IMG/VR virus record: IMGVR_UViG_3300027996_002186
Location: 248,001 to 312,000 of that record
Reading direction: 5' to 3' (one strand)
Length of the DNA stretch: 64,000 nucleotides
Positions 6,717 to 43,283 of the stretch are shown piece by piece. Made by a program: the position numbers and the translations under genes. The notes below the pieces were generated by a model, which was given only the letters and a program-made list of their open reading frames with translations, was not told the DNA's origin and made no database searches. Numbering within the stretch: the stretch's first letter is position 1; every line of letters begins with the position of its first letter.

Positions 6717-7667
6717 TTAATAATGATGGTCGAAATTCTTTTCGAAATCTCCGTATAGTATTAATTCGTTTCCGGTTGACTCAATATCTTTACCAAACCC
6801 ATATAATAAATTTGATAATTCACTTCCAAATTCCTCATTTGTGATTTTATTACCACCATTTAATTCACTTAGTAATTCGTTTAAATCCTCAACGGCCTCT
6901 CTTATGAAGAAAATAATTCTATCTTCTTCCAATATATGATATTTATCGAAATCTCTAACATTACTATTTCTCACTATATTACTAATATCCGTATAGTTTT
7001 GATTTTCATACTTACTCCTAATTACACTATTTATAACGTCATCTAACCAATCTTCTTTCATCATAGAAACCAAAAACTTAGTAACTTTTAATACAAATTC
7101 ATCAACACTACTGTTTGCTTGTTTTAGCATCAAGTGACCATATTGTGTATGGTGGTATCCATATTTATATCTTATTGGTAATTCCTCATCCATGTATAAA
7201 GAATCAACCCATCCGTTACCACCTAATCTAACTTTGTTTTTATCAAGTCCTAATTTATCAACAGTTCTGTATAAATAATAATCAATGTATCCATTTGTCA
7301 CATCCATTGGTGATTTATGTATAACACCAAATATATCATCACCACAAAGTTTATCAACCTCTTTAGAAAATAGATTTTTTATACTTTCAAAATCCCAACC
7401 CTTTCTATCGAGTAATTTTTGCATATTATTGTAATCTAAATCTAAATCTGATTGGGTAAGGTTGTGTTTTTTACACAAATCAGAAAAATTTGTTCTATAA
7501 AATTCACTTAAAAGTAAAACATCATCTGTAAACTCATCTCTTAAAACAGTCATCTTATCTCTAGTGAATCTATGTTCCATAATAAAATCACTTACCTTTT
7601 GTGGTACTTTAGACTTTCTATAATAAGATTCTTTTATAAAGTCACTATATTTCCGATTAATCGCCAT
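6717..7667 (-). CDS. Putative internal head protein (capsid-targeting-like N-terminus)
   Basis: MAINRKYSDFIKES; AATATATA 4 nt upstream (7672-7679). Confidence 0.6.
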   Translation of the reverse strand: MAINRKYSDFIKESYYRKSKVPQKVSDFIMEHRFTRDKMTVLRDEFTDDVLLLSEFYRTNFSDLCKKHNLTQSDLDLDYNNMQKLLDRKGWDFESIKNLFSKEVDKLCGDDIFGVIHKSPMDVTNGYIDYYLYRTVDKLGLDKNKVRLGGNGWVDSLYMDEELPIRYKYGYHHTQYGHLMLKQANSSVDEFVLKVTKFLVSMMKEDWLDDVINSVIRSKYENQNYTDISNIVRNSNVRDFDKYHILEEDRIIFFIREAVEDLNELLSELNGGNKITNEEFGSELSNLLYGFGKDIESTGNELILYGDFEKNFDHHY

Positions 7668-30861: not shown

Positions 30862-31022
30862 TTATTTCTGTGAATATGAGAAGAATAATTTTTACATATA
30901 ATGATAAAGTTCATAAGGGGATAGTTATTCCTGATAAAATGTTTTGGGGTAATTATAAAATTATATCAGATAATATGATTTTATCATATAGTTTAATTGA
31001 AAAAAAAATAATAAAAATAGAT

Positions 31023-31418
31023 ATGTTACTAAGAGAACAAATTAGCAAAGACTACATGACAGCTTTCAAAGAAAGAAATTTAGTAGCAAAGAGTTTACTT
31101 TCTGTTATTAAGGGAGAAATCCAAACAATTGAAAAAAACAAAATAAAAGAACTATCTGATGAAGAAGTAATGGCTATTTTGTTAAAAACAGCTAAGTCTC
31201 TAAAAGAAACTATTAAGTATGGTGGGGTTCAAGCATCTCTAGAATTAGCTATTGTTGAAGCTTACTTACCAAAACAAATGTCAAGAGAAGAAGTAACTGA
31301 AAAGTTAACTGAGCTTGTAAACTCTGGTGTCACTAAAATGGGTGTTGTTATGAAGGAGTTCGCTGGGTTCAACGACAAGAAGATGGTTTCTGAAATTTTC
31401 AGAGAATTAACAAAATAA
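31023..31418 (+). CDS. yqeY: GatB/YqeY domain protein
   Basis: Start moved to MLLREQISKDYMTAFKER; LSDEEV, VEAYLPKQMSREE, MGVVMK. Confidence 0.85.
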   Translation: MLLREQISKDYMTAFKERNLVAKSLLSVIKGEIQTIEKNKIKELSDEEVMAILLKTAKSLKETIKYGGVQASLELAIVEAYLPKQMSREEVTEKLTELVNSGVTKMGVVMKEFAGFNDKKMVSEIFRELTK

Positions 31419-31430
31419 TTTAGGAAAGAT

Positions 31431-31459
31431 AAAGACTCAGAGTAATCTGGGTCTTTTTT
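31431..31459 (+). terminator. Intrinsic terminator
   Basis: AAGACTCAGA-GTAA-TCTGGGTCTTTTTT. Confidence 0.8.
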
Positions 31460-31610
31460 ATTTCTATTGTATTATATTTTTTATATATACATTATGTCAA
31501 AAACAATCTATAATTATAGAACCGTTTGACTCATTAATAAACGATAGATAGTCTAATATCATAAAACTTTTTTGTACTTTTTGTATATATTAAAAAAAGA
31601 ATAGTTAAAT

Positions 31611-31823
31611 ATGAGTGATTTTAAACCAAGTGGTATAATAACAGAGCGTGATTATACTGGGAAAACATTGGAAGAAGCAACAAATGAAGCTCGCAAACGT
31701 GGATTTGTAGTTAGAATAGTTGAAACTAATGGTAATTCTGTAATGTTAGATATGTCTGTTAGTGGATCTAGAATAAATTTCAGAGTATCTAATGGTATTA
31801 TAACAGCAGCTTTCGGTGGATAA
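31611..31823 (+). CDS. Peptidase inhibitor I78-like small protein
   Basis: YTGKTLEEA...VRIV...MLDMSVSGSRINFRVSNGIITAAFGG resembles I78 xMDYRxDRxN pattern. Confidence 0.5.
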   Translation: MSDFKPSGIITERDYTGKTLEEATNEARKRGFVVRIVETNGNSVMLDMSVSGSRINFRVSNGIITAAFGG

Positions 31824-31824
31824 T

Positions 31825-32247
31825 ATGATGTATAAGATAGATAAACAACAAGCATATCATTCCTTTACGGTTATGCCCAAAGATTGTAATTTCAATAAAA
31901 GGGATAATGGCGGTAATGATACACTATTTGGAGGTAAGTTAATGTATGAGATGGATTATGCTGGTGCTAAAATAGCTAGAAGAGCTACTTATGGTATCGA
32001 TATTGACATGATAGTAACTGCTTCAACTGACAGGATTAACTTTGAGAAACCTGCCTTTATTGGTGATTTGGTAACTATGGAAGCCACTATTAAAGCTTAT
32101 GGTAAATCATCTATACAAATACGTATAAAGGTAAGGAGAGAAGATTTGAAAGGTGAGGTAGAACAAATTTGCTCAGCTAATATGACTTTTGTTACTATAA
32201 AAGGTGGTAAGCCGATAACTCATGGATTATGCTTTACTAAAAATTAA
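31825..32247 (+). CDS. Acyl-CoA thioesterase (hotdog fold, YciA-like)
   Basis: VMPKDCN, LFGGKLMYEMD, VTAS, INFEKPAFIGD, ANMTFV. Confidence 0.85.
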   Translation: MMYKIDKQQAYHSFTVMPKDCNFNKRDNGGNDTLFGGKLMYEMDYAGAKIARRATYGIDIDMIVTASTDRINFEKPAFIGDLVTMEATIKAYGKSSIQIRIKVRREDLKGEVEQICSANMTFVTIKGGKPITHGLCFTKN

Positions 32248-32254
32248 TATTAAT

Positions 32255-32524
32255 ATGAATTCAACTAGATTAGATTTAATTAAAGATGGTGATGTAGTTA
32301 TAATAGTTGGGAATAATCAACCATTTAAGGTTTTTAGTAAGAGTAGTTTGTCTAGGAAAGTTAAGGGTATTTGGTTATTAACAGGTGATGAAATTTTTTT
32401 AGATGGTGGAGAAGCTACATTACCAACAGACCAAGATTGGATACTATCATTAGTTGAGAAACTAGAAAATGATAAAATCGAAATTGATAAAAGAATCAAA
32501 TCTATAAAATCTATTGTTAATTAA
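32255..32524 (+). CDS. Small hypothetical protein with RxxS tag
   Basis: Start moved to 32255; ends RIKSIKSIVN. Confidence 0.6.
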   Translation: MNSTRLDLIKDGDVVIIVGNNQPFKVFSKSSLSRKVKGIWLLTGDEIFLDGGEATLPTDQDWILSLVEKLENDKIEIDKRIKSIKSIVN

Positions 32525-32637
32525 AACAATCAAAAATACCTATGAAAAAGGTATTAAAATTCACCAACATACCCTATTAAAAAATATAAAATATAGAATT
32601 AAATCTAAATTTGATTGGTGATCAACAATAAAAAACC

Positions 32638-32645
32638 TATATTTG
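32638..32645 (+). promoter_or_regulatory. TAnnTTTG promoter element
   Basis: TATATTTG 7 nt before leader-peptide ATG. Confidence 0.65.
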
Positions 32646-32652
32646 TAACATA

Positions 32653-32697
32653 ATGAAACATTTACACACATATAAAATTATGATTGACTGGGGTTAA
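32653..32697 (+). CDS. Putative hisS attenuator leader peptide MKHLHTYKIMIDWG
   Basis: 14 aa, His codons at 3 and 5; codons 11-14 form the antiterminator arm. Confidence 0.7.
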   Translation: MKHLHTYKIMIDWG

Positions 32698-32751
32698 TAC
32701 CAGCTACACATTATATATGTATAGCCTAGTCAATTTTGACTGGGTTTTTTT
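32683..32751 (+). promoter_or_regulatory. Attenuator: antiterminator/terminator switch
   Basis: ATTGACTGGG (32683-32692) pairs with CCTAGTCAAT (32725-32734), mutually exclusive with terminator CCTAGTCA/TGACTGGG (32725-32744) followed by T7. Confidence 0.75.
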
Positions 32752-32784
32752 ATGCAAAAAATAAATGATTAAAAAATTATAAAG

Positions 32785-33420
32785 ATGGAAATTAAAATTG
32801 ATAGTACTTACAAAGGAACAAGAATCCTTTTTGCGGAAACAGCTAAGAGTAAACGAGTTTTACTTAATGATATGATTGAAATACTTGAGTCTTATGGATA
32901 TCAAGAAATTATGATACCTATCATTCAAAAGCAAGAAACTTTCGAATTGAAGGTTGGTGATGAAAACCAAAATATGATGTATAACTTCAAAGACAGAGGT
33001 AACAGAGATTTATGTTTATCACCAGAATACACAGCAATTGTTCAACAATTAGCTTCTAATAGAATGAAATTTGACAAAGATGTTAAGATGTTCTACATAG
33101 GAGAATGTTTTCGTGGAGAGAATACGCAAAGGGGTAGATGGAGACAATTTACACAATTTGGTGTTGAAGTCTTGAATCCAAGTAAAGATTACTCAGACGA
33201 GATGGTTGAAATTGCTACTAAACTAATTCAATTAGTTACAAAAAATTATGAACTAAACACAGAAGCAACAAGAGGTCTAGATTACTATGATGGTGGAAAA
33301 GGATTCGAAATCGCTTGTCCTGAGTTGGGAGCCGCTAAACAAATTTGTGGAGGTGGGTCTTATAAAGGAGGAGTAGGGTTTGCAATAGGTGTGGATAGAT
33401 TACTATTATGCAACAAATAA
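32785..33420 (+). CDS. hisS: Minimal histidyl-tRNA synthetase catalytic domain
   Basis: LSPEYT, motif 2 FRGENTQRGRWRQFTQFGVE, RGLDYY, GGGSY, motif 3 GFAIGVDRL; only 211 aa, no anticodon domain. Confidence 0.85.
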   Translation: MEIKIDSTYKGTRILFAETAKSKRVLLNDMIEILESYGYQEIMIPIIQKQETFELKVGDENQNMMYNFKDRGNRDLCLSPEYTAIVQQLASNRMKFDKDVKMFYIGECFRGENTQRGRWRQFTQFGVEVLNPSKDYSDEMVEIATKLIQLVTKNYELNTEATRGLDYYDGGKGFEIACPELGAAKQICGGGSYKGGVGFAIGVDRLLLCNK

Positions 33421-33451
33421 GATATTTAAATTTTAATAAAGTAAGTGATAG

Positions 33452-33562
33452 ATGGGCATCGATGTAAAAATCACATTTAAGACTGTTAAAGAACAACGAA
33501 AGTTTATTAATAGTCATGAGACCATACTTTATTACCAACACTATATGTCCCTACACTCATAA
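33452..33562 (+). CDS. Possible 36 aa ORF
   Basis: MGIDVKITFKTVKEQRKFINSHETILYYQHYMSLHS; no recognised motif. Confidence 0.3.
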   Translation: MGIDVKITFKTVKEQRKFINSHETILYYQHYMSLHS

Positions 33563-43054: not shown

Positions 43055-43126
<72 letters not shown>

Positions 43127-43283
43127 CTAAAAGAGAAGAAATTCCCAAATAAATGAAAATAAATTTGGTTAGAAATAACTAAATGTTAAATAACTGGAGT
43201 TTTTTAATTTATTCTAAATATGTAATAATCTACTCTATGTAAATAATTTTCGGATTCAAATAGTTTATATGCTTTTAAGTATC

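What the first reader, a model, noticed from the sequence alone, without database searches (positions are those of the whole stretch)
32638..32785. Phage-encoded ribosome-mediated histidine attenuator
Seen in order: TATATTTG promoter; 14-codon leader MKHLHTYKIMIDWG with His at codons 3 and 5; segment 32683-32692 (codons 11-14) complementary over 10 bp to 32725-32734; a spacer hairpin (GCTA-ACAT/ATGT-TAGC); terminator 32725-32744 plus T7; then hisS. Established: in his/trp attenuation a ribosome stalled on regulatory codons frees the antiterminator arm, while a ribosome reaching the stop masks it. The geometry fits: a stall at His5 covers up to about nt 28-30 and the arm starts at nt 31. Inference: the phage senses charged tRNA-His and makes its own HisRS only when it is short. 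I know of no described viral amino-acid attenuator. Caveat: only two His codons.
Basis: partly seen in the sequence, partly recalled or inferred. Interest (0 to 1): 0.85.

Follow-up and report, generated by a model that had tools for sequence, protein, structure and literature searches.

The report
Phage leader-ORF attenuator, not histidine-specific
A giant marine phage carries a conserved switch made of a tiny reading frame and two competing RNA hairpins, which probably turns an RNA-repair gene cluster on when translation falters, but it shows little sign of sensing histidine in particular.

Summary
The element is conserved: I found 23 distinct variants in huge phages related to LR745206 and LR756502, one copy per complete genome and none in cellular genomes.

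The ATG is invariant and the frame always ends in or just after antiterminator arm A. Arms A, C and D change together in L091. Transcripts cut off before arm D fold the antiterminator, unless a ribosome footprint sits on the stop codon. This supports a ribosome-dependent transcription attenuator.

The histidine reading is weak:
- His3 occurs only in the window's own subclade. His5 is a single codon, replaced by Phe or Ser in two lineages and missing in two more.
- In relatives the element precedes a 67-aa basic protein gene and two RNA ligase genes. The hisS-like gene is an optional member, and it abuts the leader in the window only because of a deletion.
- The hisS-like protein is a 211-aa catalytic core, not a full HisRS.

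Verdict: a real, undescribed phage attenuator family whose signal is more likely general translation lag or stalling than histidine supply. Translation, termination and the signal are all untested.

The parts
32638..32645 (+). Bacteroidota-type -7 promoter box TATATTTG. Predicted start of transcription is about 32650.
   Evidence: Sequence. A TAnnTTTG box lies upstream of the leader ATG in 22 of 23 variants. The box occupies -12 to -5 in flavobacteria (PMC9723704). The same octamer sits 19-31 nt upstream of several long ORFs in the window. Promoter activity was not tested.
32653..32697 (+). Leader ORF of 14 codons plus stop, MKHLHTYKIMIDWG.
   Evidence: The ATG is invariant in 23 variants while its flanks vary. 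The frame stays open up to arm A in every variant even though the ATG-to-arm distance ranges from 26 to 34 nt and all three frames are used across arm A. The chance of staying open, multiplied over 9 lineages, is 8e-4. Translation itself was not shown.
32667..32675 (+). Region R1 (codons 5-8, CACAUAUAA), which can pair with the 3' half of hairpin 2.
   Evidence: It is part of the free-RNA minimum-energy fold. An equivalent duplex of 6-14 bp is present in all 19 variants tested, with different sequences in L082, L091 and L094; mean z is -1.4. Support is moderate.
32682..32692 (+). Arm A, the 5' arm of the antiterminator (GAUUGACUGGG), overlapping codons 10-14.
   Evidence: The 8-bp core pairs with arm C in all 22 aligned variants, and L091 carries compensatory swaps. 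The nucleotides are kept while the encoded peptide changes frame in L058, L064 and L085.
32688..32703 (+). Hairpin 1 (CUGG/CCAG), with the stop codon UAA in its loop.
   Evidence: The stop codon lies in this loop in 15 of 20 variants. The stem varies between lineages: CUGGG/CCCAG, GGAU/AUCC, CUCU/AGAG, AUUGACU/AGUCGGU.
32704..32724 (+). Hairpin 2, the AU-rich spacer hairpin. Its 3' half (about 32713-32721) is the partner of R1.
   Evidence: Constrained folds. It is present in variable form in the relatives.
32723..32751 (+). Intrinsic terminator: arm C 32725-32735, arm D 32736-32744, T7 32745-32751.
   Evidence: The stem is 98.5% paired across 22 variants, with 3 pairs showing compensatory changes.
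32785..33420 (+). HisRS-like catalytic-core gene (211 aa), the only gene left downstream of the leader in this phage.
   Evidence: PF13393, E = 1.3e-22. TIGR00442 scores 155 bits against a cutoff of 286.75. The alignment to solved HisRS structures shows neither the insertion domain nor the anticodon-binding domain. No TAnnTTTG box lies between the terminator and its ATG.

Best explanation
The element is a ribosome-dependent transcription attenuator at the head of an RNA-ligase operon, found in a clade of huge phages predicted to infect Bacteroidota.

Proposed sequence of events:
1. A host-type promoter starts a transcript that opens with a 10-17 codon ORF.
2. The last codons of the ORF form arm A, which is complementary to arm C, the 5' arm of the downstream terminator.
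3. Arm C is transcribed before arm D. If arm A is free at that moment, A:C forms and holds, and RNA polymerase reads through into the operon.
4. If a ribosome has reached the end of the ORF, it covers arm A. C:D then forms and transcription stops at the T-run.

The operon would therefore switch on when leader translation is absent, late, or stalled within about codons 4-7, and switch off when translation keeps pace.

The signal is most likely general translation lag or stalling, not histidine supply. In this window the operon has shrunk to the HisRS-like gene alone.

Shown: the sequence features, their conservation, covariation of the helices, and the folding preferences. Inferred: that the ORF is translated, that the terminator works in vivo, the kinetic order of folding, and the nature of the signal.
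For: - 23 distinct variants were recovered by DNA pattern and, independently, through the neighbouring 67-aa protein.
- There is one copy per complete genome and none in 185,579 cellular species genomes.
- The ATG is invariant. The frame stays open to arm A in all variants despite frame-changing indels, and stops appear at new positions to compensate.
- The predicted transcription start coincides exactly with the ATG in L081 and L084.
- Terminator stem: 98.5% paired, with 3 compensatory pairs.
- Antiterminator: the 8-bp core is kept in all 22 aligned variants. L091 changes arms A, C and D together. L088 changes the terminator from A-U to G-C while keeping U.G in A:C. L087 and L094 keep 10 bp by shifting register into the loop.
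- Transcripts truncated before arm D fold A:C: arm C pairing is at least 0.75 in 14 of 20 variants and above 0.5 in 17 of 20. It drops to 0.5 or below in all when a ribosome footprint is placed on the stop codon.
- In the window A:C is the minimum-energy fold at 78-88 nt, and the terminator only from 92 nt. The estimated barrier from antiterminator to terminator is 11-16 kcal/mol in 11 of 12 variants.
- No promoter box lies between the terminator and the next gene.
- Leader-peptide attenuation is reported for flavobacterial hosts (PMC9723704).
Against: - There is no experimental evidence for translation, termination or read-through. The only metatranscriptome fragment (32412-32708) begins upstream of the promoter and is uninformative.
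- At equilibrium the full-length leader folds the terminator in every scenario, so the model depends on folding kinetics.
- Most arm positions are invariant, partly because two of the searches required them. The decisive covariation rests on a few independent events: L091, L088, the L082 clade and L094.
- In most variants free RNA also forms A:C, so 'no translation' and 'stalled translation' are not distinguished. Only the L082 clade shows full trp-like three-state logic.
- Near-leaderless translation in the window is an assumption.
Confidence: 0.6

Rival explanations
1. One reading: a histidine-specific attenuator. A ribosome stalls at His3 or His5 when charged tRNA-His is scarce, arm A stays free, and the phage HisRS-like gene is induced.
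For: - The geometry fits: with codon 5 in the A site the ribosome covers up to about nt 28, and arm A starts at nt 30-31.
- All 12 variants whose operon holds the hisS-like gene have His5. Their nearest relative without that gene (L088) has Phe5, and L065 has Ser5.
- His makes up 1.5% of the window's proteins, so two or more His in 13 codons has P = 0.015.
- L081 has His5 and His7.
Against: - His3 is not conserved, and only one His codon is shared. As far as I recall, known amino-acid attenuators use two to seven or more regulatory codons.
- L081, L085 and the L082 clade have His codons but no hisS-like gene. L084, L087 and L094 have no His at all.
- The His codon sits in an RNA motif that encodes His in any frame. 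That motif is read in another frame in L082 and pairs with a downstream segment.
- The gene next to the leader ancestrally is a 67-aa basic protein gene, followed by RNA ligases.
- The hisS/His5 association is confined to one clade, so it amounts to at most one or two independent contrasts.
Confidence: 0.12
2. An independent small-RNA gene with its own promoter and terminator. The terminated transcript of about 100 nt acts in trans, and the ORF and the A:C complementarity are incidental or serve RNA stability.
For: - It has its own promoter and a strong terminator.
- Weak resemblances to terminator-bearing sRNA families, all far below threshold.
- Released attenuator RNAs can act in trans (PMC6614838, listed).
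Against: - The invariant ATG and the compensating stop codons.
- Three-way covariation of A, C and D, which a simple sRNA terminator does not need.
- The next gene always follows within about 20-45 nt on the same strand with no promoter box of its own.
- No conserved unpaired seed region apart from R1, which is itself paired.
Confidence: 0.12
3. A nascent-peptide or small-molecule dependent arrest leader, like ermCL, TnaC or toiL. The peptide LHTYK would stall the ribosome in response to a ligand or a translation inhibitor.
For: - Within the main clade, codons 4-8 vary almost only at synonymous third positions: TTA/TTG, CAC/CAT, TAT/TAC, AAA/AAG.
- The stall position that the switch needs (codons 4-7) matches that of short arrest leaders.
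- uORFs that sense general translation stress are known (PMC12121999).
Against: - The peptide is not conserved across the wider family. Examples: MLLYTHIKNRIDL, MKKTLYIFKTKLTKG, MKKIYLHKKY, MTNLNYIYLID, MKVTFTKYQFYELIDC.
- The same nucleotides are constrained by R1 pairing, which could equally explain the transitions seen at third positions.
Confidence: 0.1
4. No switch at all: an ordinary terminator after a tiny gene or an upstream operon. Under this reading arms A, C and D are three copies of a DNA operator for a phage protein.
For: - C and D form an inverted repeat and A is a third half-site. Concerted change of all three in L091 would also fit a change in operator specificity.
- Similar CCCAGTCA/TGACTGGG terminators occur elsewhere in relatives.
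Against: - G.U pairs are tolerated exactly where an RNA helix allows them: window C-to-U in arm C, L088 U.G, L091 G.U.
- L087 and L094 preserve A:C by shifting register rather than by keeping a fixed site sequence.
- The stop codon is consistently placed next to arm A.
- The T-run is invariant.
Confidence: 0.06

Closest known systems
Leader-peptide transcription attenuators of amino-acid operons (trpL, hisL, pheL, leuL, thrL) and of the E. coli pheST synthetase operon (pheM leader). Named from my own knowledge; pheL and trpL papers were listed.
   Same: A short translated leader ORF. An antiterminator that shares a strand with an intrinsic terminator. The end of the ORF overlaps the antiterminator arm, so ribosome position selects the fold. 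A T-run lies directly before the regulated genes. The 14-codon length matches S. meliloti trpL and pheM.
   Different: There is no run of codons for one amino acid. The peptide varies across the family, and all three frames are used over arm A. The regulated operon encodes RNA ligases and small basic proteins, not a biosynthetic pathway. The element is carried by a virus. In most variants free RNA also favours the antiterminator, so the trp-type superattenuation state is missing, except in the L082 clade.
uORFs that sense general translation stress, such as toiL upstream of topAI (PMC12121999) and the antibiotic-responsive leaders ermCL and cat/cmlA (from my own knowledge).
   Same: A very short uORF in which stalling at early codons remodels the downstream RNA structure. 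The response need not be specific to one amino acid.
   Different: Those act through RBS occlusion and Rho, or through translation attenuation. Here the output is an intrinsic terminator. No inducing drug or ligand is known, and no conserved arrest peptide spans the family.
Rfam His_leader (RF00514) and T-box (RF00230), the two described ways of coupling his-related genes to charged tRNA-His.
   Same: A terminator/antiterminator alternative upstream of a his-related gene.
   Different: Neither model matches, even at E <= 10. The leader is about 100 nt, with no Stem I or specifier loop and no run of His codons.

Membership tests
Ribosome-mediated (leader-peptide) transcription attenuator | Short ORF with a start codon inside the 5' leader, kept open in relatives | tested here: met
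   The ATG is invariant in 23 variants. The frame stays open to arm A in all of them despite indels that change the frame, and stops are re-created at new positions. The chance product is 8e-4.
Ribosome-mediated (leader-peptide) transcription attenuator | The leader ORF is actually translated | not testable with these tools
   No ribosome profiling or proteomics is available. The only RNA fragment is uninformative.
Ribosome-mediated (leader-peptide) transcription attenuator | Intrinsic terminator between the leader ORF and the regulated genes, with no promoter after it | tested here: met
   No TAnnTTTG box lies between the T-run and the next ATG.
Ribosome-mediated (leader-peptide) transcription attenuator | Antiterminator helix mutually exclusive with the terminator and supported by covariation | tested here: met
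   The A:C core of 8 bp is present in all 22 aligned variants. Three pairs show changes on both sides, and L091 changes A, C and D together. Shuffle controls gave 0/300 and 1/300. The number of independent events is small.
Ribosome-mediated (leader-peptide) transcription attenuator | Ribosome position decides the fold (the ORF end or stop overlaps the antiterminator arm) | tested here: met
   The stop codon lies between nt 4 and nt 25 counted from the first base of arm A in every variant. A footprint placed on the stop codon abolishes A:C in truncated transcripts. This is modelled, not measured.
Amino-acid-specific (His) attenuator | Cluster of codons for the sensed amino acid at the stall site, conserved in relatives | tested here: not met
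   The window has two His codons. His3 is not conserved. His5 is a single codon, replaced in L088 and L065 and absent in L084, L087 and L094.
Amino-acid-specific (His) attenuator | The regulated genes serve the supply or charging of that amino acid | tested here: inconclusive
   The operon core is a 67-aa basic protein plus two PF09414 RNA ligases. The hisS-like gene is present in one clade only and is a truncated core that falls below the hisS cutoff.
Rfam His_leader / T-box | Match to the covariance model | tested here: not met
   cmscan found no hit at the gathering threshold or at E <= 10 in 32400-32900.
Histidyl-tRNA synthetase (hisS, TIGR00442) | Full-length match above the curated cutoff, including the anticodon-binding domain | tested here: not met
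   155.2 bits against a cutoff of 286.75. Only model positions 2-146 and a second stretch containing motif 3 are aligned, and the protein is 211 aa against about 420 aa.

The most novel reading that the evidence does not exclude
The leader is a sensor of tRNA damage. Its early codons are always at least one Tyr or His codon within codons 4-8, often with Lys, Asn and Asp codons nearby. These codons are read by tRNAs that, from my own knowledge, are typical targets of anticodon nucleases. If a host defence cleaves those tRNAs, ribosomes stall on the leader, the antiterminator forms, and the phage switches on its RNA-ligase (tRNA repair) operon together with the HisRS-like enzyme. That would be a self-regulating counter-defence circuit.
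Probability: 0.1. Interest if true: 0.85.

Novelty: new variant of a known kind. Interest (0 to 1): 0.6.

Why it matters
Leader-peptide attenuation is a textbook bacterial mechanism. My literature searches found no virus-encoded example, though they were not exhaustive.

Here a whole family of huge-phage genomes appears to use the position of the host ribosome on a phage mini-ORF to gate an operon of RNA ligases and a minimal HisRS-like enzyme. If confirmed, it would show that giant phages monitor the state of the host's translation apparatus and link that reading to RNA repair or tRNA-related functions.

It would also add a compact riboregulator of about 100 nt, free of Shine-Dalgarno sequences and in some variants leaderless, from the little-studied Bacteroidota system. 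The family is absent from Rfam.

Tried and rejected
- **Rfam.** Scans of the window and of the region at E <= 10 gave only sub-threshold sRNA-like hits, driven by the terminator.
- **RNA-seq.** Two searches for runs and one lay of four metatranscriptomes produced a single duplicated fragment, 32412-32708. It says nothing about the transcription start or the 3' end.
- **Equilibrium folding with ribosome footprints.** The terminator wins in every scenario, so this cannot discriminate between models. I moved to truncated transcripts and folding paths instead.
- **RNAalifold on the 22-sequence alignment.** It recovered only the terminator, because the AU-rich middle aligns poorly.
- **Search for variants through the ORF motif.** No new members beyond those already known.
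- **Cellular genomes.** Two chance matches only.
- **L063.** This locus has a 75%-identical hisS-like gene but no recognisable element, by short-word BLAST or nhmmer.
- **Second copy.** None in the window or in the complete relatives.
- **Considered and rejected:** a T-box (no Stem I, no model hit); a ligand riboswitch (the middle of the element is the least conserved part); a minus-strand ORF at 32561-32671 (it spans a region with a 29-43 nt indel in relatives).

Full report
**1. The observation**

All the features are present.
- The -7 box TATATTTG lies at 32638-32645.
- The ORF starts with ATG at 32653 and ends with TAA at 32695-32697. It encodes MKHLHTYKIMIDWG.
- ATTGACTGGG (32683-32692) is complementary to CCTAGTCAAT (32725-32734) over 10 bp, one of them a G.U pair.
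- An AU-rich hairpin lies at 32704-32724.
- The terminator stem lies at 32723-32746 and is followed by T7 at 32745-32751.
- A HisRS-like ORF occupies 32785-33420.

The leader folds better than all 200 shuffles (z = -3.1), and the terminator is in the minimum-energy structure. A separate scan also calls the terminator. Rfam has nothing here, even at E <= 10.

**2. Origin of the window**

The region matches two unannotated 'uncultured phage' genomes, LR745206 (634,780 bp) and LR756502 (642,428 bp). These sizes match the 634 and 642 kb genomes of Al-Shayeb et al. 2020, which fall in the Mahaphage clade and are predicted to replicate in Bacteroidetes (PMC7162821). DNA runs that hold the window are marine.

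A Bacteroidota host fits three observations:
- the TAnnTTTG promoter type;
- the lack of Shine-Dalgarno sequences;
- the same octamer sitting 19-31 nt upstream of several long ORFs in the window.

In flavobacteria this box occupies -12 to -5 (PMC9723704). That puts the transcription start near 32650, only 3 nt before the ATG.

**3. The element is a conserved family**

I recovered homologues by three routes:
- a DNA pattern built on the three arms, searched in viral and metagenome contigs;
- loci encoding the hisS-like protein;
- the 67-aa basic protein that follows the element in relatives, a route independent of the element's own sequence.

This gave 23 distinct variants. Each complete relative has one copy, the window has one, and 185,579 cellular species genomes have none.

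**4. Genomic context argues against a hisS leader**

In 20 of 22 non-window variants the element precedes a 67-aa basic protein gene. In the L082 clade, L058 and L088 one extra gene lies between. After the basic protein gene come small ORFs, two PF09414 RNA ligases and, in one clade only, the hisS-like gene. Homing endonucleases are scattered among them.

The window, and its near-identical relative L073, have lost the 67-aa gene by a deletion that joins the terminator tail to the hisS-like start. No RNA ligase is found anywhere in the 64 kb. A broken remnant of the ORF that normally follows hisS-like lies at 33408-33544.

The hisS-like gene is absent from the operons of L065, L081, the L082 clade, L085, L087, L088 and L094.

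The protein is a 211-aa catalytic core. It retains motifs 2 and 3 but lacks the insertion domain and the anticodon-binding domain. It scores 155 bits against a hisS cutoff of 286.75.

**5. The leader ORF**

| Variant | Leader peptide |
|---|---|
| window, L041, L069, L073, L074 | MKHLHTYKIMIDWG |
| L001 | MRALHTYKITIDLG |
| L006 | MKALHTYKIVIDWGN |
| L066 | MKALHTYKILIDWR |
| L075 | MRTLHTYKTLIDWG |
| L078 | MRTLHTYKIPIDWT |
| L002 | MKTLHTYKNVIDWM |
| L091 | MKTLHTYENMISWI |
| L058, L064 | MKTLHTYKIRLTGY |
| L088 | MRDLFTYKRMIDWT |
| L065 | MFVLSTYQILIDSKRVV |
| L082 | MLLYTHIKNRIDL |
| L083, L090 | MLLYTHIENLIDL |
| L084 | MKKTLYIFKTKLTKG |
| L085 | MKKIYLHKKY |
| L087 | MTNLNYIYLID |
| L094 | MKVTFTKYQFYELIDC |
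| L081 | MKLEHKHKNVFVK |

- The ATG is invariant while its flanks vary.
- The distance from the ATG to arm A ranges from 26 to 34 nt, and all three frames are used across arm A. The frame from the ATG nevertheless stays open up to the arm and closes in or just after it.
- In L058 and L064 a 1-nt deletion changes the C-terminal frame, and a new in-frame stop appears in the same hairpin loop.
- The chance of the frame staying open, multiplied over nine lineage representatives, is 8e-4.
- In L081 and L084 the -7 box sits 4 nt before the ATG, so the predicted transcription start is the A of the ATG itself, giving a leaderless mRNA. Elsewhere the predicted 5' UTR is 28-46 nt and A-rich.

I conclude that the ORF is probably translated. 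The C-terminal codons are constrained as RNA, not as peptide.

**6. Histidine**

- His3 occurs only in the window's subclade.
- His5 is kept throughout the LHTYK clade. It is Phe in L088 and Ser in L065, and L084, L087 and L094 have no His at all.
- The His and Tyr codons lie in the motif ACACACAUAU, which gives a His codon in every frame. L082 reads it one frame over, giving YTHI.
- That motif (R1) pairs with the 3' half of hairpin 2 in all 19 variants tested. L082 (ACACAC/GUGUGU), L091 (GAAA/UUUC) and L094 (UACAAAAUA/UAUUUUGUA) use different sequences for the same pairing. Mean z is -1.4.

Every operon with a hisS-like gene has His5. Two or more His in 13 codons has P = 0.015 against a 1.5% background. 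Both points are confounded by shared ancestry, so I keep the His-specific model as a rival at about 0.12.

**7. The RNA switch**

*Terminator (C:D).* It is 98.5% paired over 22 variants, and three pairs carry compensatory changes. These are A-U to U-A in the L082 clade, A-U to G-C in L088, and two swapped pairs in L091.

*Antiterminator (A:C).*
- An 8-bp core is present in all 22 aligned variants.
- In L091, arm A changes GAC to AGC, arm C changes GUC to GCU, and arm D changes GAC to AGU. This is a three-way concerted change.
- L088 keeps a U.G pair in A:C at the position where its terminator pair became G-C.
- L087 and L094 keep 10 bp by extending into the terminator loop.
- Shuffling the sequence upstream of arm C reaches the observed pairing in 0 of 300 trials for the window and 1 of 300 for L091.

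*Hairpin 1.* It joins the 3' part of arm A to a segment just after the stop codon, and its sequence varies between lineages: CUGGG/CCCAG, GGAU/AUCC, CUCU/AGAG, AUUGACU/AGUCGGU. The stop codon lies in its loop in 15 of 20 variants.

**8. Folding logic**

- At equilibrium the full-length leader always folds the terminator.
- Transcripts that end before arm D fold A:C. Arm C pairing is at least 0.75 in 14 of 20 variants and above 0.5 in 17 of 20.
- A ribosome footprint centred on the stop codon reduces that pairing to 0.5 or below in all variants.
- In the window, A:C is the minimum-energy fold at 78-88 nt. The terminator takes over only from 92 nt.
- The estimated barrier from antiterminator to terminator is 11-16 kcal/mol in 11 of 12 variants.

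The most economical model follows. A ribosome that has reached the end of the ORF while C and D are being transcribed causes termination. A ribosome that is absent, late, or stalled at about codons 4-7 allows read-through. In the L082 clade, free RNA sequesters arm A through R1 pairing, and only an early stall frees it, which is the full trp-type logic.

**9. Comparison with known systems**

The element works like a leader-peptide attenuator and meets the structural criteria I could test. It fails the criteria for an amino-acid-specific attenuator: there is no codon run, and the operon is not a pathway for one amino acid. The closest functional analogues may be uORFs that sense general translation stress (PMC12121999). 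Literature searches found no virus-encoded leader-peptide attenuator, but they were not exhaustive.

**10. Limits**

- Nothing here is experimental.
- The public RNA data gave one fragment, 32412-32708. It starts upstream of the promoter and is uninformative.
- Two of the searches fixed the arm sequences, which inflates their apparent invariance.
- The covariation rests on a handful of independent events.
- The kinetic argument uses thermodynamic models without RNA polymerase or ribosome dynamics.

Noticed in passing
window 32785-33420; relatives L001:1994-2629, L002:2670-3302: The 'hisS' is a 210-211 aa HisRS-like catalytic core without the insertion or anticodon-binding domains. It is conserved at 74-100% identity in one phage clade and usually sits between two RNA ligase genes. 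Its substrate is unknown.
   Followed up: partly
relatives L001:1777-3602, L002:1634-4275, L065:2621-4395, L081:2947-4545: The operon behind the leader encodes a highly basic 63-71 aa protein (182 homologues, no Pfam or PHROG family), a second small basic protein, and two PF09414 RNA ligases. It looks like an RNA or tRNA repair module.
   Followed up: partly
window 32752-32784 and 33408-33562: The window's operon is a reduced remnant. The 67-aa gene and both RNA ligase genes are missing from the whole 64 kb. The ORF that normally follows hisS-like survives only as a broken piece (two tblastn segments in different frames).
   Followed up: yes
relatives, 6-15 nt upstream of the leader ATG (e.g. 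L041, L006, L058, L091, L094): A conserved AATATATAA motif lies just upstream of the leader ATG in most variants. In the window the TATATTTG box occupies the equivalent position. It may be a second promoter or an initiation enhancer.
   Followed up: no
relatives L058, L088, L092, L082/L096, L062: Homing-endonuclease genes (HNH, GIY-YIG, NUMOD1-type) are inserted at varying positions inside the operon, in L058 and L088 between the leader and the 67-aa gene. The locus appears to be a hotspot for mobile elements.
   Followed up: no
window 32526-32560: A 7-bp hairpin (AATACCT...AGGTATT) lies between the upstream gene and the promoter. On the minus strand it is followed by a T-run. It gave a weak, sub-threshold CRISPR-DR5 hit (21.7 bits against 40). 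It may be a minus-strand or bidirectional terminator.
   Followed up: no
window 30870-32524: The upstream genes are a YqeY-like protein (PF09424), a 70-aa protein with a weak PASTA match, a 4HBT thioesterase (also next to the locus in the L082, L090 and L096 relatives, on the other strand) and a 100-aa ORF with no family. A clean terminator lies at 31431-31456.
   Followed up: no
window 43055-43127: A tRNA-Met (CAU) gene, the only tRNA in the window.
   Followed up: no
L135 (Prevotella amnii NZ_KB905279.1) 6799-6860: A host-phylum genome has a terminator with the same CCCAGTCAAG/CTTGACTGGG arms, preceded by GATTGACT at the end of a gene. There is no leader ORF, so this is probably coincidence.
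   Followed up: partly
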